NCBI GenBank assembly: GCA_001642005.1
Contig: LWCA01000134.1
Location: forward strand, 1-48,945
DNA: 48,945 bases
Direction: 5' to 3'
From: Intoshia linei
Taxonomy: Eukaryota; Animalia; Orthonectida
Numbering within the stretch: the stretch's first letter is position 1; every line of letters begins with the position of its first letter. The position numbers and the translations under genes are program-made. Positions 3,690-48,560 of the stretch are shown here, piece after piece. Under the pieces are notes generated by a model, which worked only from the letters and a program-made list of their open reading frames with translations, searched no databases and was not told where the DNA came from.

Positions 3690-5577
3690 ATGATGTTAAT
3701 AGTGTATTTAAATTTTTTGTTCGTCTTTGCATCTCTAAATCAAAGTTCATGCAATAGAAAAATATATTTATTGCAAAATGTAATAATAAACACTAAAAAG
3801 GTGCAAATTTTATCAAACTCAGTTTATGTCAACCCTATTATAGGATGGAAATCTTGTCTAACAGAATGCTGCAATAATGGTATATTTAATGAATAATATA
3901 ATACGTATTAGAATAATGGAGCACTGTCGGAAGTTCACACGATTCAAAGTTTGTGCTCGGGTTTAATTTTGATAGAAATTTACTGAATAATAAGTACATT
4001 ACAATGCATTGTATTGTTGAAAATATAACGGGTGCTTCGAATCGCGTTTCAGACTCTTCGCATAATGTAAATATTTAGATAAATGTGACACTACAATGTT
4101 TTTGTTTGAAAATGAAGGCTATACTTGCACAACTTTGAAATGTAAGGTTTGTGAATTTACACAAATACAAGATGCTATATTGATACTATCGGGTAAATTT
4201 AATGAAAGAAAATATAGTGATTTATCGGACGAAAATTTTATTTTAAGTAAAGGAAATTTTGACAAAATGGAAAAATTTATGAATAAGACCAAGTATATTA
4301 AAAACTACGTTGAGAAACTAAAAAAATTAGACATTGGTTTGGTGAAAACAAATACGACAAAGTCAATTTCACCACAAACTACTACCACTACGAACATGAC
4401 AACTATAACTAAAAAATTCACCAGTGAAATGAGTTCCACAGTTACAAAATCGCCTTACATTATAAAGAATTTAACAAATCATTTTATGACAACAAAAATT
4501 TTATTACTTACAACAAAAAACCTGAAAAAATTAGATGCCAATACCAGTACCACGAGTACAAAAATCCCTTTCAAAGCTCCAAGAATTTTGACAAATACTC
4601 CTTTTTCTACAATTCAGTCTACCTCAGAGACAATAAAAATCCCTAAAAGTTCAACAAATACAAATTTCTCCACTACAACTCAAAAAAATCATCCAATTAC
4701 CAAAAATATGACAAATACTCCTTTTTCTACAATTCAGTTCACCTCAGAGACAACAAAAACCCCTAAAAGTTCAACAACTAAAAATTTATCTGTTACAACT
4801 CAAAAAGATCATCCAATTAACAAAAATATGACAAATACTCCTTTTATTGAAGCCAGCATCAGCACAACAAAAACGTATAGAAGTGAAATGCCTCTAAAAA
4901 GTACTCCAATCTCTACTTTGACAACCCAAAATAGGAAATTAAGTACTAAAGAGCCAATTAACTCTTTAAATTCTTCTGTGTCATCAATAACAAAAGATGG
5001 AGTGACTACAGAATTTTCATTAAATGTTGTTAATAAGTCTACAACGACTTATATACCGGTTACATCTCGTGTAACAAACATTAGTACTCAAAGATTACCT
5101 AAGAATAATGATACAGTTGACCGCTCCGATGTAAACGTTAGTACATTTTTTACTCGATCAACACGTTTACAGTTAATACACGGGAAAATAAATTCAAATA
5201 AAACAAAAGACGGTATATCTACCCCTGCACATTTATTAACTACAATTAATACTACCAAAAAGATAATAAATAGTTCTATATTGACCACACATACAATTCC
5301 ATCTTTTACTAACATTTTTACTAAAGATATGAATACAACACTGAATAATTCCACTTTAAAACCTCACATAACTTCAAATAGAACCACCCAAATGAGACCA
5401 TTGGTAAATATGACAGTTTCATTTAACAGTACATCAATATATACCCTGAATACAACCGTCGATTTTAAAGCCAGGTCTGAAACCATTCACACATATATAA
5501 TTTCAGCGTTTACAATTAGTTTATATGTTGTTAGTATTGTTGCGGTAATAATTGTGGTATATCTGGCTCACAACTAA
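3690..5577 (+). CDS. MANSC/MANEC-like mucin-type membrane protein, paralog 1 (exons 3690-3879, 4079-5577)
   Basis: Signal peptide; 8-Cys domain C..WKSCLTECCNN|DKC..MF..YTC..KC.VC; long Thr/Ser-rich stalk with many NxS/T sites; C-terminal hydrophobic segment. A phase-1 intron joins the two ORFs. Confidence 0.8.
4588..4846 (+). repeat. 120-bp (40-aa) coding tandem repeat, about 2.2 copies, in the mucin stalk
   Basis: ACAAATACTCCTTTT recurs at 4591, 4711 and 4831; peptide unit TNTPFSTIQ.TSET.K.PKSST..N.S.TTQK.HPI.KNM. Confidence 0.9.
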
Positions 5578-5708: not shown

Positions 5709-8101
5709 ATGAATATTTGGTTTTATTTTTCTATATTTTTTTTGAATCTTATATACAAGACGATTTCGGGTAATTTGCAATGTGATGGTAATATATACTT
5801 AATTAAACATCTTGGACCGGGTATACTTGGTAATAGCACCATTATTAATCAGAAAGATTTTGATAATCCCGTCACTGGTTGGAAATATTGTTTCGCAAAT
5901 TGTTGCAATGATGGTAATTTTTATTGATAGAAAAATTGTATAGAGTAGAATCTACTCCAGTATTTTCTAGTCTAGAGGGCTAGGGAAATTACACGAATTT
6001 ATTGGAATTATAAATAATTTAGATTAATTTAACCTTCATTTTGTACAATACTAGCATTATTGTTATGTAATTCGAACAAACAGCAGGTAGCTCTGCCGAT
6101 GAACGACTTTTTAATTTTTAGAGTTGTAATTTATGATAATACTTATGATTTTAAAAAATAATCCAGAATTTATATTTTATAAATGCTGTAATTTTTTACA
6201 AAAAAAGGGGATTTGGTGGTTTGACCATTAAAATGTGTAAGTAAAAGATTCTCATGTGTCATACCTAATATTAATAAAACCGGTAAGAATCAGTGATATC
6301 ATTATTTCTATAAAATATATATTATAATTAGCTCAAGTTTCGACAATAAAAGCTTTCGATAAGTAATTTATTAGAAAATTATAATTTTTAGTAAATAATA
6401 GTCACTGAATTAATAATAATTCGTTTTTGATTCAACTGTCATATCATCCCCAAAAATTTGGCCGTTAGGTCATTTTTTGAAGTGGGATTATCATAAAAAA
6501 GGTTGGGAAACAAAATCTACTCAGTAGATAGCTACTATGTCATTTCGTTATTAAAACAGTTTTGTTGTTTGCATCTGAAACAAATGAGGAATTTTTCTAA
6601 TAACCTGGATACACTTGTAATTTTTTTAATCTGACCGATTTGAGAAATAATGTCCCTCTGATGGATTTATAACTTTAATAAAATGATAAAATATTTAGAA
6701 AAATGTGATAGCATGACATTTACGAAATCTGGGAATAATTATACTTGCACAAATATCCAATGTACAAATTGCAAATTAAAATTTGTACCGGAAAGTACAC
6801 TTATTCTGTTATACGGCATTGGAAAAAACTATACAAATTTAAACATACACCAACTGCATATAAAATTTCAAAAATTAACATATGAAAAGTTGACAAATTT
6901 GATGAACCGACGCAATATTATTAAAAATTATATTAAAAAAATGGTTAAAACAGAAAAAGCAATTGTACTAGAAACGACAACAGAAAAAATGAATATTAAA
7001 TCAACAAAAATGACTACTACAAAACAATTAATAAGGATAAATCAAACGGTAGAAAATAGCCTTAAAAATGTATTAAATGTTACGTTGGTTCAAATAGTTA
7101 CTACGCCCAAGACCATCCCAATACAAAATAGCACAACCACAATAAAATTGAATGAACAAGAAACGCAAATAAGTAATGAGGATAATAAAGTCATTGATAT
7201 CATGGAAAATGTTTTAAAAGATGATGAAATGATGTCATCAAATTTAATGAATATGTTAGAAAAAAATACGACACAATTAGATGTGGGAATCAATCAAACA
7301 CTGGATGCGTTAAAGGAATTAGAAAATGGTGTAGAAATGAAACGAAACGAATCAATAAATATATTGACCGATGAAAGTGATAAACAAAAACAAGTTGAAA
7401 TAGATAATGAAATGGCTTTAATCAAAATTGAAAACCAAGAAAAAATAAAAAAAGCTGAATTGTCCATAAACGAAGCTGCAAGAGGCATTATAATTGCTGC
7501 AGCTCATGAAGCTGAGAATATTATAGAACATGCAAAATCTGTTGCCAAAAATTATAAGGAATCAATGCAACACCAATTTGAGGAATGGTTAAACGATAAG
7601 AAACAAGTTGAAGTCGAGTTAATGAAATCCATGATTGACCAAAAATTGATTATTAAGACTGTAGCCATTGCAAAAATGAACAATCAGTTGGATTATGAAT
7701 ATAAAAATCAACAAGAAAATTTTAAAGATCGAATGAATATATTAATTCAAAATCATAATGAAACCGAGTCCCAAAATTTATCAAATTATAAAAAAATTCT
7801 TGCAATGCTTGTAAATTCTTATATAAATGGTTTAATCATTAATGAAACAAATAAAAATCATGGGATAGGGAATAATCCAACATACAATGTACTCAATCGT
7901 ACCAATAAAGTAAATCAAACTAATAATGCCATAATATACAAAGATCCAAATCCTTATCCATATGTGTATCTCTATTTAGTTCCTTCCGTTGTCATTTGTG
8001 TCGTAATTGTGAGTCTGTTCTTTATTTATAGTGTAAGGGATTATGTAAACAAGCATGTTGAAGTACTAACAATATCAAAGATTAAAAAGGAGAAGAAATA
8101 A
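5709..8101 (+). CDS. MANSC/MANEC-like type I membrane protein with coiled-coil stalk, paralog 2 (exons 5709-5913, 6699-8101)
   Basis: Signal peptide; C..NPVTGWKYCFANCCND|EKCDSMTF..YTC..QC.NC; the same phase-1 intron as paralog 1; E/K/Q/N-rich helical stalk; TM VYLYLVPSVVICVVIVSLFFIY; short basic tail. Confidence 0.8.
5958..6514. mobile_element. hAT-type MITE in the intron of paralog 2
   Basis: Perfect 8-bp TSD ATCTACTC (5950-5957, 6515-6522); degenerate CAGT.../...GGTTGGGAAAC ends. Confidence 0.65.
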
Positions 8102-9156: not shown

Positions 9157-10050
9157 CAGTGCTTTTCAAACTTTTTTAAACATTCACCCCCTGTGACGCA
9201 TATTTTTGTTCTATTCACCCCCAATAAAACAATTATTATGATATGTCATAATTGTGTAGGAATACACAATTTGCACTTATAAAATGTACTGAATTAATTA
9301 AATTTGAGTACACATGACGTCTTCACGTGATCACATCATTTTAAATTTTCATTGTTTGTTTTAAGCATCGTAAATAATGCATATTATTTTCAATATTTTC
9401 ATGAGAGTAAACATGTTTAAATCTACGTTATAGATGTCACTATAATTCAGAAGTAAAAAAATATAGTAATTGTGATTACCATAATTTATTTATTAATAAG
9501 AATATCAATTAGATAAGCAACTTTTAAAAAAAATTTGGTTAAACTGAATGTATGAAAGGGTTAAGTCAATTTTGTACACGAAACATCTAAATTTGGTAAT
9601 TTCTTTTAGAATCAGATGGAGATTTCTATATAAAATTTTGATAAAATTGGATTTTTCAAAAAAATATTTGTAAAAGGGGATTATTTCCTTAAGGGTTGGT
9701 AAAATATTGGTTTTTTGACATACAGTCAGACTTGTTGATAGTGAACTAATAGTGAACTTAACTAATATTAACTTGACTTATATAGAAAATAAACTTAGAT
9801 TCATGATAAATAATGTTTCATTTAACTGTCATTTTCATTGTTCATTATTTTTTTATAGTGAACATTAAAATAATTCGGAACCAAATGTTCACTATTCACA
9901 AGTCTGACTGTATTTGACTAAATTAAATAAAATATGTTAAAAATTTATTATTTACCCCTATTCACCATCAATCATCTAAAATTTTAGTATTCACCCCCTC
10001 ATAAAACTATTCACCCTTGGGGTGCACAGTCACCCCCATGAGAAGCACTG
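9157..10050. mobile_element. hAT (Charlie/Buster-type) MITE
   Basis: TIR CAGTGCTTTTCA / TGAGAAGCACTG; perfect 8-bp TSD GTGTAGAC (9149-9156, 10051-10058); subterminal TCACCCCC repeats. Confidence 0.9.
9723..9910. mobile_element. Tc1/pogo-type MITE nested in the hAT MITE
   Basis: 24-bp TIR CAGTCAGACTTGTTGATAGTGAAC / GTTCACTATTCACAAGTCTGACTG (22/24), flanked by TA on both sides. Confidence 0.9.
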
Positions 10051-12147
10051 GTGTAGACGTTCAATCCATATTTTTTTGAGTTGTAAGATCAATATTTACT
10101 TTTTCATTTTAAATTAAAATTTAATTTAATGATAATATATTATAAATTATTTTTCACCGTGAATGCGTAGATTTCTGGAATTAAAATTTTGTATATATAT
10201 CAACTGGAATAAGCTGTATCAGGATTAATTTTTTAAAATTCTAGGGCTGTTTTCATTTTTAAAAAGGGTAATCTGAGTTTTTGATCGTGAAAATTTCCTT
10301 TTTCAAGGTTTTCATTTATGATAATGTTTATGATTTTCAAAAGTATCTCAGAATTTATGTTATATAAAATTCTAAGACTTTCTTAATTAATACAAAAAAG
10401 GGTTATTTGTGGTTTTGACCGTGAGGATATAAGATTTTGAAATTGAAAATTATCATAATATTAATGAATTTAAAACTTTTTATTAGAATGTGTATTTTTT
10501 ATAATTCTAGGACGGGTTTGAATTTAAAGCAAAGGACAATTGGGGTTTTTAACCATGAACGACTCAATTTCTGAAATTGAAATTTGCGATAAAACATAAT
10601 TCTAAAAAAACTGTTATAGAAATATGGAATTTGTAAAACGACCCCTCTTACTTTCTTAAATAAACTGGATCAAACAAACATACATTTTTAACCATTTCAC
10701 TAAACCATTTTAACCACCATTAATAATTTTTAATATAATATTAGTAACAAGATACAATTGTACCATCTGTAAAATTTTTTAAATTCTAGTGCTGTTTTCA
10801 TAAAAAAAGAAGGGTCATTTGTGATTTTGGCCCTGGAGATATAATTTTTTTAAATTCTCTAACTGGTTTGATTTTCAAAAAAAATCAATTGGGGTTTCTG
10901 ACCCGTACGATTTGAGTTTGGTAGGTTGAAATTTAGTTTGCGAACACCCCCGGAAAAAACTGTAATTGAAATGTGGACTTTATAAAATTCTAAGACTGGT
11001 AGTTATTTCAATAAACGATAACACAAACAAATATTGCATAGTATATTATAATATGCTATGATTATATAAGTAATAACACACACACAAACAAAAATCGCGT
11101 AGCATTTTATATAAGGATGATTCAGACTAAAACTAGTACATAAATAGTAGTAGATTAGTTCATTACTCATTACATTCATAAGATCATTACTAATGATATA
11201 TTAAAAATTATTTTCCACCGCGTATTTATGGATTTCTGAGGTATAAATTTTTTATATATATCAACTGGAATAAGCTGGAAATTGAAAAATTCCATATTTA
11301 CTAAACATGCCATTAATTAAACCCATTTCAAATTTACCAATTGACATATATTGTAAATGAGTGTACCAAAAAATAAATATAAAAAATTTACACATAGCTA
11401 CAAAATTATACTAATCACTGATTAGTATTCATTAATTTGGCACTGAAAAATAACTTCAACCAACAAAAAAATAACACATGTTGTATAATATAATAGCTCG
11501 GGAACAATCCCATTATGACGATTGAATTTAATAAATACATGATAAATGATAATGTATTGATTATTTAATATTTGAACAGAAATCAAAATCCGTGATCATT
11601 TCAAATTAAAAATATAATACCATTATAAATGAAGTTTTTAATTCCATTTAATAAACCATATCTTTCCCACATAATAAATAACTGATTAAATGAAATTATA
11701 TGTGTTGCATATTTTATAATTTTCAATATTTACATTTAACGTTAATATTTTCAAAAACAAAAAATATATAACAATAGAACGCTACATAACAGTATAATTA
11801 TAATGAGAGCCTTGAACCTTAATCAAATGAATAAGATAGTAAAAAAATAGAAACTTCCACATAGATGAATGAAAATTTGTCGATTATAATGTTACAAAAA
11901 TAAATCAAATTAAATGAATTTCCAGCTCAGAAAACGACACAACACAAGTTCGAACAATTACACAGAATAATAATGCATGTTGCAATACTTCTAGCCGTAT
12001 CCTCAAGTTAAAAATAGTGAGAAGTAAACATTACGTTTCATACATATGGGATCAATTGATTTATTTAATTTTTCAAAATTTTGATCAATACTCGAAAATT
12101 CACATTTAGTTTTAAATAATTGGTAAAATTTTACATTCATTTTTAAA

Positions 12148-37117: not shown

Positions 37118-37959
37118 TACAGTATTGTGTATAATTAGAAAAAATAAAAATTTAAATTGCTTCACGTTGGTATAGTAAACGTTTTGTAATTTAATTTTAT
37201 TTTACATTTCATTGACAACAGTATTTATTTACCAATATCTTGGATATTTCAATCGAGTTATTTTCATATGAAATTTTTCAATATTTATAATTCATCATTG
37301 TTTCCAATTATTGAACCGTTGAATTTATACTTAGCGCCAAACTGTAATTATTTTTTTAATGTAATTTTGTAATTTATTATTATTAATTTAATTATATTTG
37401 TCTTGAATTTTTATTAATGGATTCATTCAATAATCTAAAATTGTTTAATTTCATAATGGGATAACCATAACATTTATGAAGTTAAATAATGGGTATCAAA
37501 AAGTATGACTCTAAAATAGTGGAAATGAGTAGTAGACTAATAATAGAGATGTAAATAAGTGAGGTCGGTTTTTTTAATTACAACTCATTTATGTTTTATT
37601 TATCTAGTTTTGATTTTTGTTTAAAAATTAAGTAAATTTTTTAATACAATTATCAACATTCTACTTTTATTTACGTATATTTTAAGAAATTTTATTTTTT
37701 AAAATTTAAATGTTTATTAATTAATCTATGGAATGGTTTATATGGAAAATATAACTTTATTGTTTTCTTAAATTAAATATTTATAAATCATCTGTAATTC
37801 TATTGGAATTTTTCAGTTTTAGTAAATATTTACTTTAAAATAATTTTAATTTATGTTATTTTAGATATTGATGTGAAAAAGTATTTAATGACGTTATTTA
37901 ATTATTAGTTGACAATATCTTATATTGTTTATTTATTATCATACCTTATTTATATCAAA

Positions 37960-40477
37960 ATGGCAAAAAATGACTTGCACAGCGCATGTTATGAAAACAT
38001 TCAGTTTAACCTACCTAAACAGTCCGTCCAAACTCTTTCAAAAGTGGTGGAAAGTGATTGGAAGTTGTTGAAAAAATTGGGTCTTTTGTCTTTTAATTCA
38101 CACGACAGTAGTTCTGTAGTTATTTCAAATAGAGGATTTAACCGTTCCAGCAACGTAAATCACAGACTTTCAACATTGAAACAAAATAATTCACTCAAAT
38201 TAAAACAAAATGATAGTACACTAACCAATTATACTAATTTGGTTAATATATCCAATATGCGTGCTCCTCATGTTAAACCCACCGAAATCAAATCTGTTCC
38301 GACTACAACAATTACGCATAAATTTGTCAAGTTGGCGAGACCTCCCACTGCATCAAATTGTCATATTCCGCTAAAAAAACCTAAAATTCAAGAGAATGTA
38401 TATGAACAAAACATTCAACCTGCACATTCTCAGAATGTTAATACAAATAAAGTATACTCTAAGCTCTATTCTAATGCGAATCAAGTGGATAGTTCAGGTA
38501 TTGGTCAATCCATTGCGAAATCTTTAGTAACATCAGAAATGCCAGTAATGAAACATCCTAGTGAACCAAATAGAGTTTATGTAAATAACAGCAACATTAG
38601 CGGTTCGAAAAGTAGAGAGAGACCAGAAGTTAGCCATGTAAATAGATTAAACCAACAAATGAATGTCCGTCTCTCATCTCCACTCCTAGTTAACCTGTTG
38701 GGTAAAAAATCTAAAGAGACAAACGAACCTTTTAGCTCAAACATTGTAGGAAAACCTACCTCTATGAACTACGCTAAAAACTCCAATAACCAAAACTATC
38801 AATATTTCAATTGTGATAATAAGCAATACACTCCAAATTCTCATTTAAACATGTATCCACCAAATAACGTTTATAAGGGAAAACGTGCGACAACACCTAA
38901 CGTTCATGTTTATTCTGTTAGACCTAGAATGAACTCTATTAGAAAACAATTACCTCAACGTGAAATTAGACCTGCTACTCCTAGACCCACAGCGAAACCT
39001 AGACAAACTCCTGTACCCTCAGTAGATTCGAATGGTTCAGAAACAGTTGAAAAGGAAGTTTTTTATGAATATTCTACTCCAGTGCCTAATGCTTATATAA
39101 AAAACGGTATTTTTATCTAAGGTTGGTAAATTTTAATTGTTTATTTAGATGTGAATCAAATTCACCGCCCACATTACGTTAATGTTAGAACTCAAAACAA
39201 TCAAATGTGGAATTATGATGCCAATCATGCGACTAATATGCCATTGCAAAGACGTACACCTGACAACCAAAACTTTAGGCGCGTTTACAGGGCTGAAAAT
39301 CGAATGAAAATTCCACAAATGGATCCCAACATGTATAAATATAAAAATGTCATAAATGGCTCAGCACTGACGCAAAATGCGCACTCTAGAAGAAATATAG
39401 CTTATTCCACGACACATTTTACCAAAAATGTGAATGATTATGAATACCAAAACAGAATGCAACAAAATGCTTACAAAAATTATTACGAAGGCCAACAAAT
39501 TATGCAACAGCCAAATCAAGTATACACCAATAATGTTCAGTACCAAAATCAGAAATTTAAAGTCATGCATGATCAACGTTATCAATATAGAGGTCAGGTT
39601 CGTAACATGAATGTCAATCAACCTCGAATTGAGAAAGGTTATATTTTTTATATTTGACTTTTTTTTTAATCTCATTTTAGAAGCTCAACGAATGTATAAT
39701 GATCCAAATGTACAATATAGAGGCAATGTCATGGTTCAAAGAAATGAAAAATATGCAAATTTTCAAAATACACAAAACAAAAACATTGGATTAACACCGC
39801 GTACTCCATGTTCACCCCACAATTCAACTTCGTCAATGTCTCCTAATGTAATGCACCCTAATCGACTTACAAATGCTACCATGCGGCATGTTAAATACCG
39901 AATGAATCCTGCCCATCTCAATTCCATGCATCCTCCTTCCATGTACAAAAAAAATGAATATTTAATGCACGACCCTCAATATTCCCAAGTCAATTTAAAG
40001 TCAAATATTCAACAAACCCCCATATCGAGAACATCCACTCCTCAAGAATATAAACAACCACTTTCTGTCAAACCTAACCAGCACTTTTCTCGGCCCGTAA
40101 AATCTTTACGATATAGTACACCTCATGATAATTATAACGAACAATACTTTACCATACCAGAAAATCCTTATTCAGTTTACTCGACAATGCCGAATAATTT
40201 AAACCAGCGAATGCAATATACAAATGAACCAATAAATAATTACCCTCAACCTACCCAAGAATATGTTAATAATAAATCTATGGATTCTTACAAGAATTAT
40301 GTACCTCATACATACAAAAACAGAAAAATGGCCAAATTTACTGCAGAAAAATTAGTTCAGGATGCAAAAAATTCTTCTCAGCTACCTAATGCTGTTGATA
40401 TGGAAGTAGCTGACAAAATTGAAAGCTATGACTTTCTCGTAAGCCTTATTCAAGAAACCAGCCCCAAAAACGGATAA
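37960..40477 (+). CDS. NCOA6: Nuclear receptor coactivator 6-like protein, about 810 aa (exons 37960-39106, 39149-39637, 39681-40477; 5' end uncertain)
   Basis: N-terminal IQFNLPKQSVQTLSKVVESDWKLLKKLGLLS resembles NCOA6 VTFNIPREAAERL..L..LGILS. LSSPLLVNLL matches the NCOA6 LxxLL-1 motif (TSPLLVNLL). The remainder is N/Q/Y/P low complexity. Confidence 0.75.
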
Positions 40478-46182: not shown

Positions 46183-47293
46183 ATGAAGAAGGTAATATTA
46201 TCAAAAACCAATATCTTCTCCTTAATAACGAGAAAGTACATTTACAGAATAGAAAAGTATTTGCAAGATTATGAGAATGACGCATTTTTAAAAATGCGAA
46301 AAGACGGCATGCCGATATTGTGTTATATAGCCAATCTTACCGATTTCGAAGAAGATTATTTGTGTTTTGTAGCACGCAAATTGATAAAGAATGGTGCGTC
46401 GGTCGCTACAAAAGACGATCAATTTAATCGAAATGCTTTGCACTACGCTTGCTACAATTTCAAACCAAAATGTAATTTTTTTCTGTTTTAAAATTTAAAT
46501 AAATAATTATAAATTGTTAGTAATTGAAATATTTTTAAATTCAATGGATTACAATATAAATGCACTGGATAATTTAAAAAATACCGCTTTGTATTATTCA
46601 TGTATCAACTACATCAATAATAGAGACGAGGGGACATTATCAGTGATAAATAGGATTATGAATTTTATGAAAAAATGCAACCCTTTGATAGAAAAAATTT
46701 TGAATAGAAAAAATGAATTGGGTATTACATGTTTTCAAGTTATGAAAAAATGCCCTGAACTTAATCAATGTATACATTTATGTAGAAATTCAATAAGAAA
46801 TAATGAAAGAAAATATACACAACATAGTTGTTACATGAAAAATAAATTATTTTCTCGAATGGGTAGTTTAAATATTTATGAAAGTAATACTCCAATATTT
46901 CCAAAAATTGACAGGTCTAATACTGCACCTCAAACGAGAAGATCATACAACACTTGTCGCAATTCATTTGATTTTATCAATGAAAAAGTCAGAAGAGATG
47001 ATTCTAACCTGAAAAAATTAAATAATTATACAGAAAAAGAAAATTTGAATTCTAGACAAAGTATAAGTTTGATGTATTATTTGTATTTACACCAGTTCAG
47101 TCCGTCTTATGTAGCTAATCATTCTTTCAGCAATCTGGCCGACAATAAATCTATTCCTACTCCAGGTAGTTCAAGAACATCTATACGTGTGGATCATCAC
47201 GTTTCTATAAAAAGTTTTAAAAGCGAATCTATATTCTTTAATTTAAAAAGCAAGGATTTGGGTGACGTTTCAAACTATATTTTAAAAATTTAA
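46183..47293 (+). CDS. Ankyrin-repeat protein (intron 46472-46520; start uncertain)
   Basis: RKLIKNGASVATKDDQFNRNALHYAC..|LIEIFL..NINALDNLKNTALYYSC..LNRKNELGIT are ankyrin consensus repeats; Ser-rich tail. Confidence 0.75.
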
Positions 47294-47530
47294 TATACGT
47301 ACTGTACTGTATTAATAAACTTTTATTTTCAATTTTTACTTTATTTTTTAAACAATATATCCGTATTACCAACTGGGTAATACCTATGTAATGTTTATTG
47401 TAACAATAATTTTTAAATAAGTTTTTATTCTGTTTCAATATTCTAAAGATACTTAAGTCGTAATATAAAATAGATTAGTTTCGAATGTAAATATAGAGAT
47501 TAATAAACTAATCTTGTCTCATAGACTACA

Positions 47531-48560
47531 TTACACCTCCCCGTCAAAATTAGTGATATATTCACTAAGGTGTGAAAGTGGTTTCCAAACACATTGAGCT
47601 ACACCTAGTCATTGGTCACAGAGTATTCTTGACGTGACATGAGAGGAGGTAACATAACTTGGTACTGGTCTCCAACTCTAACATCCGTCCGATGCAATTT
47701 GGAGCTGGATTTTGAAGAATGTGAATCAGCTTTTTGGTTATTTTTAGTCTTAGATCTTTTTTTTCGTTTCACATTATAGTCTTTCATAATAATGTCCAAA
47801 TTTGTTGAACCGTCCATTAACAAAGTTTTTTCTTCGTCCTTGACAAAAACATCGTTTTCACCCTCAATTTGAATATCGAATGTTTTCATTAAGTCGTCTT
47901 TCGTTGGATTGTATTCAGTGTCGGTAGTTTCAGAGCAACTCGTTTCGTTTTTAATGAGCATAATTGTATTTTCATTCTGATCAGTGTTGTCATTTTGTAA
48001 ATCAACCGATGTGGTCAGATTACCCTGCAAGAGATTTACTTTCATCTTGTCTTTCCAGCAAAGCTCTTCATAATGGGAAAATTTCCCACAATTTTTACAT
48101 TTATGGCTCCATGCAGGGCAATTTGTTCGGATTTTACAGAATTTTCCACACCCACGGCAATAATTTATATTTGTTTAATAATTGGATTCTTTTTCGTTAA
48201 CAAATTCATAAAGTATTGCGTGAGCTAACGCCATCTTATGTGATAGGCTAACTTGCATAAGTTAATTATTGTAAAGTTTTATCAGTTAGACCGTATAAAA
48301 ATTGATCCCGAAGTACCTCAAATTTTAATTTTGCATCGTAATTACATTTATCAACTTGTTCCCTCAACTCGGCATTAAATTCAGCAATAGATTTTTGCTG
48401 TTAAAGGATTTTCCTTAATTTAAATCTCTCAATTATTTTGTACAATCTGTATATCGATCATAATTGTTGCATCTTCCAAACTATAAAATTTGCATGCTTC
48501 ATAGCCTATAAGATTCTTACAAAGACTTGCTATATTTTGTCTGTAGCAATTCTTTCATCT
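47531..48560 (-). pseudogene. Degenerate Ty3/Gypsy-type Gag fused to an acidic linker and an ELM2 domain
   Basis: LIGYEACKFYSL..ERFKLRKIL*QQKSIAEFNAELREQVDKCNY..LRDQFLYGLTD..CRGCGKFC..CPAWSHKCKNCGKFSHYEELC, then in frame ..KRKKRSK..VRVGDQYQVMLP..[frameshift]LGVAQCVWKP. Stops at about 48402, 48267 and 48176. Confidence 0.75.

What the first reader, a model, noticed from the sequence alone, without database searches (positions are those of the whole stretch)
47531..48560. Retrotransposon Gag fused in frame to a CoREST-like ELM2 (HDAC-recruiting) domain
Seen on the minus strand: Gag capsid motifs (ERFKL, SIAEF.AELR, LRDQFLYGL) and a double zinc knuckle (C-x2-C..CPA..C-x2-C-x4-H-x4-C). These run with no stop or intron (48174 to 47608) into an acidic linker, an NLS-like KRKKRSK and VRVGDQYQVMLP. 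The ELM2 second half (LGVAQCVWKPLSHLSEYI) follows after a 1-nt shift. Known: in Ty3/Gypsy elements protease and RT follow the knuckle, and ELM2 of RCOR/MIER/MTA binds HDAC1/2; RCOR reads RVGPQYQA..DNLGMLVWSP..EYI. Inference: an LTR element captured an intronless corepressor fragment in place of pol. This copy is dead (3 TAA stops, frameshifts) but may mark a family of Gag-ELM2 elements or a domesticated gene that modulates host silencing. I do not know this architecture from elsewhere.
Basis: partly seen in the sequence, partly recalled or inferred. Interest (0 to 1): 0.85.

Follow-up and report, generated by a model that had tools for sequence, protein, structure and literature searches.

The report
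Retrotransposon Gag relic carrying captured corepressor cDNA
At the end of an Intoshia linei (orthonectid worm) contig, a decayed retrotransposon Gag gene runs in frame into an intron-free, truncated copy of a CoREST-like corepressor gene from the same genome; this kind of capture is already known, and the copy looks dead rather than a new Gag-ELM2 gene family.

Summary
On the minus strand, a Ty3/Gypsy-type Gag relic (capsid motifs with three TAA stops and frameshifts, then a double zinc knuckle) runs without a stop from 48174 to 47608. That open stretch covers an acidic linker, KRKKRSK and the ELM2-specific motif.

The window is the whole contig LWCA01000134.1 of Intoshia linei, not human. 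Window 47976-47578 is 94.7% identical to five exon segments of a gene on another contig of the same assembly, A3Q56_04098, which has ELM2 and SANT domains and is closest to RCOR1. Four GT..AG introns of that gene (1399, 46, 272 and 45 nt) are exactly absent here, so this stretch is a processed cDNA copy.

- Homology starts exactly at an exon acceptor of the parent.
- It ends inside an exon, with no poly(A).
- 35 nt further on lie a polypurine-like GGGGAGG and a possible 149-nt LTR (TGTAATG...CATTACA).

This fits LTR-retrotransposon-mediated retroposition, a known mechanism.

The copy lacks most of ELM2 and all of SANT, and has a net 4-nt deficit that creates the stop. dN/dS is 0.50, not distinguishable from neutral. 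No other Gag+ELM2 protein was found among 1.84 billion representatives.

Verdict: a chimeric retrocopy, probably dead, and a new member of a known kind.

The parts
48178..48457 (-). Gag capsid relic of a Ty3/Gypsy-type LTR retrotransposon, in three stop-free pieces (48457-48404, 48400-48269, 48261-48178). It is broken by TAA at 48403-48401, 48268-48266 and 48177-48175 and by a frame change near 48265-48261.
   Evidence: Piece 48400-48269 hits a profile of Gag relatives at E 4.9e-5 and 7.2e-7 among all six-frame pieces of the window, at profile positions upstream of the knuckle. A read-through with X at the breaks aligns to P0022 residues 90-150 at E 0.002 in a set of 54 proteins chosen only for their knuckle match. 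Pfam itself gave no Gag hit on the short pieces.
48432..48554 (-). Possible more N-terminal Gag piece in a third frame. This is not supported.
   Evidence: Stop-free piece of 41 aa. It has no Pfam hit and no profile hit. It is listed only because it sits where the Gag N-terminal half would be.
48058..48159 (-). Double zinc knuckle (nucleocapsid part of Gag), with all eight Cys/His ligands present.
   Evidence: It is 56-59% identical over 34-40 aa to Mytilus Gag proteins P0005, P0007, P0010 and P0021. Relatives carry Retrotrans_gag or Ty3_capsid, aspartyl protease and RT_RNaseH domains.
47977..48057 (-). Post-knuckle stretch up to the junction, probably still element-derived. It ends in ..ATCAG just before the captured cDNA. 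The ATG of the annotated 146-aa ORF is at 48045.
   Evidence: Alignments to P0023, P0019 and P0013 run on through this stretch. It has no similarity to the parent locus L001 above shuffled controls.
47578..47976 (-). Processed (intron-free) partial cDNA copy of Intoshia linei gene A3Q56_04098. Blocks 47976-47886, 47885-47815, 47814-47721, 47720-47686, 47685-47607 and 47606-47578 correspond to L001 9583-9673, 11073-11143, 11190-11283, 11556-11590, 11636-11714 and 11719-11747.
   Evidence: 378 of 399 nt are identical. The four L001 gaps (1399, 46, 272 and 45 nt) are GT..AG introns.
47626..47682 (-). ELM2-specific motif (VRVGDQYQVMLPP...), the only part of ELM2 left in the open frame.
   Evidence: Pfam ELM2 positions 1-19 of 53, at 15.9 bits against a cut-off of 21.7. 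The same stretch in parent P0002 is part of an ELM2 match of 25.3 bits. The motif consensus EIRVGxxYQAxI is from PMC3710971.
47605..47607 (-). TAG stop that ends the 189-codon frame. It coincides with a net 4-nt deficit relative to the parent (L001 11715-11718 have no counterpart between 47607 and 47606), which throws the rest of ELM2 out of frame.
47543..47577 (-). 35 nt of unknown origin between the end of the cDNA homology and the polypurine-like run. It would be the 3' end of the element's internal region if the LTR reading is right.
   Evidence: Homology to L001 stops at 47578, inside the parental exon. There is no match elsewhere in the window or L001.
47536..47542 (-). Polypurine-tract-like GGGGAGG directly in front of TG.
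   Evidence: It is the only GGGGAGG in the window on either strand. G-rich purine runs followed by TG occur at about 5 places in 2 x 48.9 kb.
47387..47535 (-). Putative 3' LTR or solo LTR remnant of 149 nt, starting TGTAATG and ending CATTACA. This is inferred and weak.
   Evidence: The termini are read. There is no second copy in the window or L001, and the contig ends before a 5' LTR could be seen.
47605..48045 (-). ORF called as a gene in the public annotation (146 aa, P0001). It starts after the knuckles.

Best explanation
This is a chimeric retro-copy made by an LTR retrotransposon. RNA of a Ty3/Gypsy-type element and mRNA of the host CoREST-like ELM2-SANT gene A3Q56_04098 were combined during reverse transcription. 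As a result, the part of the element after the Gag zinc knuckles (protease, RT, integrase) was replaced by the spliced 5' part of the host message.

Shown:
- The Gag capsid relic and the knuckle are real.
- The host-derived part lacks four introns of its parent.
- The host-derived part starts exactly at an exon acceptor of the parent.
- It stops inside an exon and has no poly(A).
- No pol and no SANT domain exist anywhere on the contig.

Inferred:
- The 3' junction arose by a template switch of reverse transcriptase shortly upstream of the polypurine tract.
- The 5' junction arose in one of two ways. Either a chimeric read-through transcript was spliced from the element into exon 2 (the route by which retroviruses pick up oncogenes as Gag-onc fusions), or reverse transcriptase jumped at the 5' end of the message.
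- The 149 nt after GGGGAGG are the 3' LTR.

The in-frame join gives a 189-codon open frame (knuckles, acidic linker, KRKKRSK, ELM2-specific motif). This frame needs no selection to explain it. The copy has lost the ELM2 helical part and the SANT domain that the family needs to hold and activate HDAC1/2, so it is most likely a dead relic that the annotation called as a 146-aa hypothetical protein.
For: - Source: the window is I. linei contig LWCA01000134.1, and the parent lies on LWCA01000502.1 of the same assembly.
- Colinear blocks are 94.7% identical, and the four GT..AG introns are precisely absent.
- The 5' limit of homology is at L001 9583, the first base after an AG acceptor. The 3' limit is at L001 11747, inside an exon. 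There is no A-run.
- The parent has ELM2 (25.3 bits, above the cut-off) and SANT, and its best solved relative is RCOR1 at E 8e-13.
- The knuckle is homologous to mollusc Gag and Gag-Pol proteins. The capsid piece hits the Gag profile at E 7e-7.
- No pol or SANT remnants occur in the whole window.
- A unique GGGGAGG followed by TG...CA termini lies 35 nt after the cDNA.
- dN/dS is 0.50, with p 0.25 against neutrality. An open frame of 189 codons has P 0.11-0.46 at this divergence.
- The mechanism and its hallmarks are described in PMC5131818: an internal element ORF replaced by a partial mRNA, 3' truncation, and no poly(A) or target-site duplication (TSD).
Against: - The 3' flank is not proven to be retrotransposon sequence. 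The putative LTR has no second copy in the roughly 71 kb of I. linei DNA I could read, and the contig ends before any 5' LTR or primer-binding site.
- Microsimilarity at the junctions, a hallmark of the template-switch model, cannot be scored without an intact reference copy of the element.
- The capsid part carries more damage (3 stops in 93 codons, P 0.006-0.08 at the age of the cDNA copy) than the rest. Gag may therefore already have been defective, or older, when the cDNA arrived.
- The annotated first exon of the parent (12 nt) is not in the copy, so the true 5' structure of the source RNA is unknown.
Confidence: 0.62

Rival explanations
1. Two unrelated events. An old Gag relic was already sitting here. 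A processed copy of the corepressor mRNA, made by a LINE-type or other reverse transcriptase, later landed just after the knuckles. It joined in frame by chance and then lost its 3' half and poly(A) by deletion.
For: - The capsid part looks more decayed than the cDNA part.
- An in-frame join has a 1 in 3 chance.
- No LTR pair, primer-binding site (PBS) or junction microsimilarity could be shown.
Against: - LINE-type copies keep the 3' end and poly(A) and lose the 5' end; here it is the reverse (PMC5131818).
- The element's pol is missing exactly where the cDNA sits.
- A polypurine-like run plus TG..CA termini follow within 35 nt.
- This reading needs an extra deletion that happened to end next to those signals.
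Confidence: 0.2
2. A living chimeric gene. The 146- or 189-residue product (zinc knuckles, basic NLS-like patch, ELM2-specific motif) is expressed and kept by selection. It might, for example, act as a small peptide that occupies the HDAC1/2 groove used by ELM2 proteins, or as the cargo of a still mobile non-autonomous element.
For: - A 189-codon open frame sits in 27% G+C DNA and was called as a gene in the annotation.
- All eight knuckle ligands and the ELM2-specific motif are intact.
- That motif alone contacts a groove on HDAC1 in the MTA1 complex (PMC3710971).
- dN/dS of 0.50 is below 1.
Against: - The open frame is expected by chance at this age (P 0.11-0.46).
- dN/dS is not different from 1, and the parent lineage alone would pull it below 1.
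- The frame ends at an indel inside ELM2, just before the conserved Trp, which is now out of frame. Mutation of the residue corresponding to that Trp in MIER1 weakens HDAC1 recruitment (PMC3710971).
- SANT is absent.
- No orthologue or second copy turned up in any database searched.
Confidence: 0.08
3. Assembly artefact: Gag, cDNA-like reads and intergenic DNA were wrongly joined at a contig end.
For: The feature lies in the last 1.4 kb of a short-read contig, next to a repeat-type sequence.
Against: - The cDNA-like part differs from the parent at 21 of 399 positions plus an indel, so it is not the parent's own cDNA contaminating the library.
- An assembler cannot remove four introns.
- G+C content and the reading frame run smoothly through the Gag-to-cDNA junction (G+C 0.37 on one side, 0.36 on the other).
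Confidence: 0.03
4. One reading: an ordinary RCOR/MIER-type gene whose ELM2 exon happens to lie next to an unrelated Gag insertion.
For: ELM2-SANT genes do exist in this genome.
Against: - The copy is intron-free where the real gene has four introns.
- There are no further ELM2 or SANT exons anywhere on the contig.
- A convergent ankyrin-repeat gene ends at 47293, leaving no room downstream.
Confidence: 0.02

Closest known systems
LTR-retrotransposon-mediated retrocopies (Tan et al. 2016, Genome Res, PMC5131818). Earlier cases include yeast Ty chimeras, maize Bs1, rice retrocopies inside LTR elements and HERV-K/FAM8A1.
   Same: - A partial, spliced copy of a host mRNA sits where the element's internal ORFs should be.
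- The copy is truncated at the 3' end and has no poly(A).
- Element sequence lies on the 5' side.
- It can give new chimeric ORFs.
   Different: - Only the 5' flank is proven to be element sequence.
- The LTRs, target-site duplication and junction microsimilarity could not be checked.
- The host is an orthonectid, a group not examined in that work.
- The 5' junction falls exactly on an exon boundary, which the plain template-switch model does not predict.
Retroviral oncogene transduction giving Gag-onc fusion proteins (read-through plus splicing at the 5' side, non-homologous RT recombination at the 3' side; Swain and Coffin 1992 as cited in PMC5131818; the details are from my own knowledge).
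   Same: - Gag is fused in frame to the 5' portion of a spliced host message.
- The 5' junction is at a splice acceptor, and the 3' junction is inside an exon close to the polypurine tract.
- pol is lost.
   Different: - This is a retrotransposon relic in an invertebrate, not an infectious virus.
- The captured piece is a truncated corepressor fragment with no sign of activity.
- The route is inferred from anatomy only.
ELM2-SANT corepressors (RCOR/CoREST, MIER, MTA, RERE, MIDEAS).
   Same: The captured piece comes from a gene with ELM2 and SANT domains whose best solved relative is RCOR1. It keeps the ELM2-specific motif that lies in a groove of HDAC1 (PMC3710971).
   Different: The window copy has no SANT domain and none of the ELM2 helical part, and the frame breaks after about 26 ELM2 residues. 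The parent itself is short (259 aa as annotated, about 302 aa with the two exons the copy reveals), has one SANT, and has no close kin in the databases.
Domesticated Gag genes (Arc, PEG10, RTL/SIRH, PNMA).
   Same: A Ty3/Gypsy-type Gag with capsid motifs and a knuckle sits in a host genome without pol.
   Different: Here the capsid ORF is broken by three stops and frame changes. There is no orthologue and no sign of selection.

Membership tests
LTR-mediated chimeric retrocopy | Intron-free copy of a multi-exon parent gene present elsewhere in the same genome | tested here: met
   Four GT..AG introns of L001 (1399, 46, 272 and 45 nt) are precisely absent, and the exon blocks are 94.7% identical.
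LTR-mediated chimeric retrocopy | Element sequence on the 5' side, with the element's internal ORFs replaced by the copy | tested here: met
   The Gag capsid and knuckle lie directly upstream. There is no protease, RT or integrase anywhere on the contig.
LTR-mediated chimeric retrocopy | Element sequence (PPT, LTR) on the 3' side | tested here: inconclusive
   A unique GGGGAGG is followed by TGTAATG...CATTACA over 149 nt, but no second copy exists to confirm an LTR.
LTR-mediated chimeric retrocopy | Partial mRNA, 3' truncation, no poly(A) | tested here: met
   Homology ends inside an exon at L001 11747, and the next bases are TTTCACACC, not an A-run.
LTR-mediated chimeric retrocopy | Microsimilarity between element and mRNA at the switch points | not testable with these tools
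   This needs an intact copy of the element, and none was reachable. The eukaryote assembly cannot be searched as DNA here.
Ty3/Gypsy (Metaviridae) Gag | Capsid domain recognisable by family models | tested here: inconclusive
   Pfam Retrotrans_gag and Ty3_capsid gave no hit on the short broken pieces. A profile I built from relatives gave E 7e-7 for 48400-48269. Some of those relatives pass, or fall just short of, the Pfam Gag cut-offs.
Ty3/Gypsy (Metaviridae) Gag | CCHC-type zinc knuckle(s) after the capsid | tested here: met
   The knuckle is 56-59% identical to the double knuckle of Mytilus Gag proteins, with all ligands present. Pfam zf-CCHC itself did not report a hit.
Ty3/Gypsy (Metaviridae) Gag | Intact element with pol and two LTRs | tested here: not met
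   There is no pol, and no LTR pair exists within the contig.
ELM2-SANT corepressor | Complete ELM2 domain (specific motif plus helical part) | tested here: not met
   Only Pfam positions 1-19 of 53 are in frame, at 15.9 bits against a cut-off of 21.7. Homology to the parent ends 9 residues after the frame break.
ELM2-SANT corepressor | SANT domain after ELM2 | tested here: not met
   tblastn of P0002 against the whole window matches only residues 3-84.
ELM2-SANT corepressor | Binding of HDAC1/2 | not testable with these tools
   This needs a pull-down or co-expression experiment.
LINE-type processed pseudogene | 3' end of the mRNA with poly(A) kept; truncation, if any, at the 5' end | tested here: not met
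   The 5' part is kept, while the 3' two-thirds of the coding sequence and the poly(A) are absent.
Domesticated Gag gene (Arc/PEG10/PNMA type) | Open capsid reading frame conserved between species | tested here: not met
   There are three TAA stops and frame changes in the capsid part. No orthologue was found in the protein collections.

The most novel reading that the evidence does not exclude
The chimera is not dead. It is transcribed, from the element's promoter or as a non-autonomous element that still moves, and it yields a small nuclear protein with two zinc knuckles, a basic patch and the ELM2-specific motif. That protein competes with ELM2-SANT corepressors for the groove on HDAC1/2. 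This would be a retrotransposon-borne decoy against host silencing in one of the most reduced animal genomes.
Probability: 0.05. Interest if true: 0.7.

Novelty: new member of a known kind. Interest (0 to 1): 0.3.

Why it matters
- It is a clean example, in an orthonectid, of an LTR retrotransposon picking up a host message. Both junctions are readable: one at a splice acceptor and one inside an exon near a polypurine-like run. That anatomy is the same as for retroviral Gag-onc capture.
- It shows that reverse-transcriptase activity of this kind acted fairly recently (dS about 0.09) in a 43-Mb-class, strongly reduced genome.
- As a by-product, the copy records the parent's splicing. Two small exons (L001 11190-11283 and 11556-11590, 43 codons including the KRKKRSK patch) are missing from the public model of A3Q56_04098.
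- It does not reveal a new Gag-ELM2 gene family.

Tried and rejected
- **Pfam on short pieces.** Pfam on the short stop-free Gag pieces and on the shifted ELM2 piece gave nothing useful.
- **First Gag profiles.** Profiles built from the closest knuckle relatives (sets A and B) did not detect the capsid pieces (E 0.45). Only a profile of the P0022 group did.
- **5' LTR, repeats, pol.** I looked for a 5' LTR, direct repeats, pol remnants or other copies of the putative LTR in the window and in L001. I found only AT-rich noise.
- **Source of the post-knuckle stretch.** I looked in 9.5 kb upstream of the parent gene for a source of 47977-48060. Scores were no better than shuffles.
- **Alternative genetic code.** I considered a code with TAA/TAG read as Gln to explain the TAA stops. 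I rejected it because TGA stops and frame changes also occur and other ORFs on the contig use the standard code.
- **Tiny intron.** I considered a 15-nt intron at the ELM2 frame break. I rejected it because removing it keeps the frame and runs straight into TAG, and the parent shows a plain 4-nt difference there.
- **Spliced-leader trans-splicing.** I considered this to explain the junction at the acceptor. I found no literature on it for orthonectids, and no test was possible.
- **Further kin of the parent.** A search with P0002 for kin of 142-453 aa found none.
- The only read-through used X at each break, inside a script.
Full report
**What is in the sequence.**
- Stop-free pieces were listed with coordinates.
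- Capsid-like pieces lie at 48457-48404 (..ERFKL..), 48400-48269 (..SIAEF.AELR....LRDQFLYGL..) and 48261-48178. They are separated by TAA at 48403-48401, 48268-48266 and 48177-48175 and by a frame change near 48265-48261.
- A single open frame of 189 codons follows (48174-47608, ending in TAG). It holds the double zinc knuckle (48159-48058), an Asn/Asp/Glu-rich stretch, KRKKRSK and VRVGDQYQVMLPP.
- The window has 27% G+C.

**Where it comes from.**
- The 146-aa ORF inside this frame is a called gene on contig LWCA01000134.1 of Intoshia linei, assembly GCA_001642005.1. That contig is 48,945 bases long, so the window is the whole contig.
- Intoshia linei is an orthonectid, a minute parasitic spiralian. 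The contig is not human.

**The Gag part is real.**
- A search of the 189-aa frame against 1.84 billion representative proteins gave 24 hits. Apart from the window's own product, one Intoshia protein and two matches to the linker region (P0003, P0004), they match the knuckle region, at E 9e-7 to 1e-3.
- The best knuckle matches are mussel proteins (Mytilus coruscus, M. edulis), 56-59% identical over 34-40 residues with all eight ligands aligned.
- These relatives carry Retrotrans_gag or Ty3_capsid, and longer ones carry aspartyl protease and RT-RNase H. The knuckle therefore comes from a Ty3/Gypsy-type Gag-Pol.
- Pfam did not recognise the short broken capsid pieces, and neither did profiles of the closest knuckle relatives.
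- A read-through of the capsid side with X at each break aligned best to P0022 residues 90-150, upstream of that protein's knuckle. The E-value was 0.002 in a set of 54 proteins chosen only for their knuckles.
- A profile of P0022 and its kin then picked piece 48400-48269 out of all 2698 six-frame pieces of the window. The E-values were 4.9e-5 and, with three more relatives added, 7.2e-7. The hit sits at profile positions that precede the knuckle.

**The ELM2 part is a processed copy of a gene on another contig.**
- The only non-self protein hit over the linker and ELM2 start is Intoshia linei A3Q56_04098 (P0002, 259 aa).
- P0002 passes the Pfam ELM2 cut-off (25.3 bits against 21.7) and has a SANT/Myb domain. 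Its best solved relatives are RCOR1 (E 8e-13), RCOR3 and MTA1. 'CoREST-like' is therefore fair.
- Its locus, L001 (LWCA01000502.1), was fetched.
- Window 47976-47578 aligns as one uninterrupted stretch to six L001 blocks: 9583-9673, 11073-11143, 11190-11283, 11556-11590, 11636-11714 and 11719-11747. Identity is 378 of 399 nt.
- The four L001 stretches between the first five blocks are 1399, 46, 272 and 45 nt long. Each begins with GT and ends with AG.
- Four introns removed to the base can only mean that the window copy was made from spliced RNA.
- The copy also shows that the public model of the parent skips two small exons (11190-11283 and 11556-11590, 43 codons, including the KRKKRSK patch). 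These are open in L001 and have canonical splice sites.

**The two junctions.**
- Upstream, homology begins at L001 9583, the first base after the AG acceptor of the parent's annotated intron 1. The 12-nt annotated first exon is not in the window, and nothing in the 9.5 kb upstream of the parent resembles window 47977-48060.
- Alignments to other Gag proteins run through that post-knuckle stretch, so it is probably still element sequence. It ends in ..CAG, the usual last bases of an exon before a donor site.
- Downstream, homology stops at L001 11747, about 28 nt before the end of that exon, with no A-run.
- After the end of homology come 35 nt of unknown origin, then GGGGAGG. This is the only such heptamer on either strand of the window, and G-rich purine runs followed by TG occur at about five places in 98 kb of strand.
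- Directly after GGGGAGG comes TGTAATG, and 149 nt later CATTACA. I read this as a polypurine tract and a short LTR. That reading is an inference: there is no second copy in the window or in L001, and the contig ends before a 5' LTR could appear.
- No protease, RT, integrase or SANT remnant exists anywhere on the contig.
- A convergent ankyrin-repeat gene ends at 47293.

**Mechanism.**
- The anatomy is Gag, then a spliced but 3'-truncated host message without poly(A) in the place of pol, then a polypurine-like run and possible LTR. This is the anatomy described for LTR-mediated retroposition in flies, mosquito, fish, birds and mammals, and earlier for yeast Ty, maize Bs1 and rice (PMC5131818).
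- A LINE-type copy would keep the 3' end and poly(A) and lose the 5' end, which is the opposite of what is seen.
- A 5' junction exactly on an acceptor has roughly a 3% chance under random break points. That figure is my estimate from about eight junctions in a message of about 900 nt.
- This junction suggests one of two routes. A read-through transcript from an element inserted upstream may have been spliced into exon 2, as in the classical model of retroviral oncogene capture that yields Gag-onc fusions (my own knowledge; Swain and Coffin 1992 is cited in PMC5131818). Alternatively, reverse transcriptase ran to the 5' end of a message that starts there and then jumped. I cannot tell these two apart.

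**Is it alive?**
- The frame ends at a net 4-nt deficit relative to the parent (between 47607 and 47606). This puts the rest of the copied ELM2 (GVAQCVWKP) out of frame, and homology ends nine residues later.
- In the MTA1-HDAC1 structure, ELM2-SANT has three parts: an N-terminal specific motif (EIRVGxxYQAxI) that lies in a groove of HDAC1, a four-helix part that follows, and the SANT domain. Mutating the residue in MIER1 that corresponds to MTA1 Trp199, at the start of the helical part, weakens HDAC1 recruitment (PMC3710971).
- The window product keeps only the first of these three parts.
- Against the parent, Nd is 13.5 and Sd is 6.5, giving dN/dS of 0.50 and dS of 0.09. This is not different from neutral (p 0.25), and a constrained parent lineage alone would lower the ratio.
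- Simulated neutral decay at 2.6-5.3% divergence leaves 189 codons open in 11-46% of trials, so the long frame needs no selection.
- Three or more stops in the 93 capsid codons arise in only 0.6-7.6% of such trials. Gag may therefore already have been damaged, or older, when the cDNA was joined to it.
- No other protein combining the knuckle and ELM2, and no orthologue, was found.

- Right: the Gag, the knuckles, the in-frame run, the CoREST-like origin, the lack of introns, the replacement of pol, and the dead state.
- Wrong or unsupported: the stretch LSHLSEYI as part of ELM2, since it lies beyond the breakpoint and the parent reads quite differently there.
- Wrong or unsupported: the size of the shift, and the idea of a family or a domesticated gene.

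**Limits.**
- I could read only about 71 kb of this genome (the window and L001). The eukaryote assembly cannot be searched as DNA with these tools.
- As a result, the element's other copies, its LTRs, the junction microsimilarity and any sister copies of the chimera are untested.

**Verdict.** This is a chimeric, most likely dead, LTR-retrotransposon-mediated retrocopy. It is a new member of a known kind and of modest interest.

Noticed in passing
L001:11190-11283 and L001:11556-11590 (parent gene A3Q56_04098 on LWCA01000502.1): The retrocopy shows that the parent's mRNA holds two small exons (94 and 35 nt, 43 codons, with the KRKKRSK patch) that the public gene model skips. Both are open in L001 and flanked by GT..AG.
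   Followed up: partly
L001:2054-5462: A second SANT-domain gene (267 aa) lies about 4 kb upstream of the parent on the same strand. It is 44% identical to the parent in the SANT region and 34% in the stretch before it, so it is a tandem paralogue.
   Followed up: no
window 4096-5577 and 6683-8101 (+): Two neighbouring long ORFs (493 and 472 aa) have similar Cys-containing N-terminal parts and a C-terminal hydrophobic segment. The first has a long Thr/Ser-rich, mucin-like middle. They look like tandem paralogues of a membrane protein.
   Followed up: no
window 47349-47397: A 22-nt-arm inverted repeat (82% complementary, 5-nt loop) lies in the short space between the putative LTR end (47387) and the 3' end of the convergent ankyrin-repeat gene (pair I4).
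   Followed up: no
window 37909-40477 (+): Three consecutive long ORFs are rich in Asn, Gln and Pro. They overlap the span that the public annotation assigns to an 810-aa gene without Pfam hits, which it places on the window's plus strand.
   Followed up: no
window 48058-48159 (-): The first 11 residues of the knuckle (CRGCGKFCKIR) are identical between this orthonectid relic and Gag proteins of Mytilus mussels. This is a strikingly conserved unusual first 'knuckle' in which Cys replaces the usual His.
   Followed up: partly
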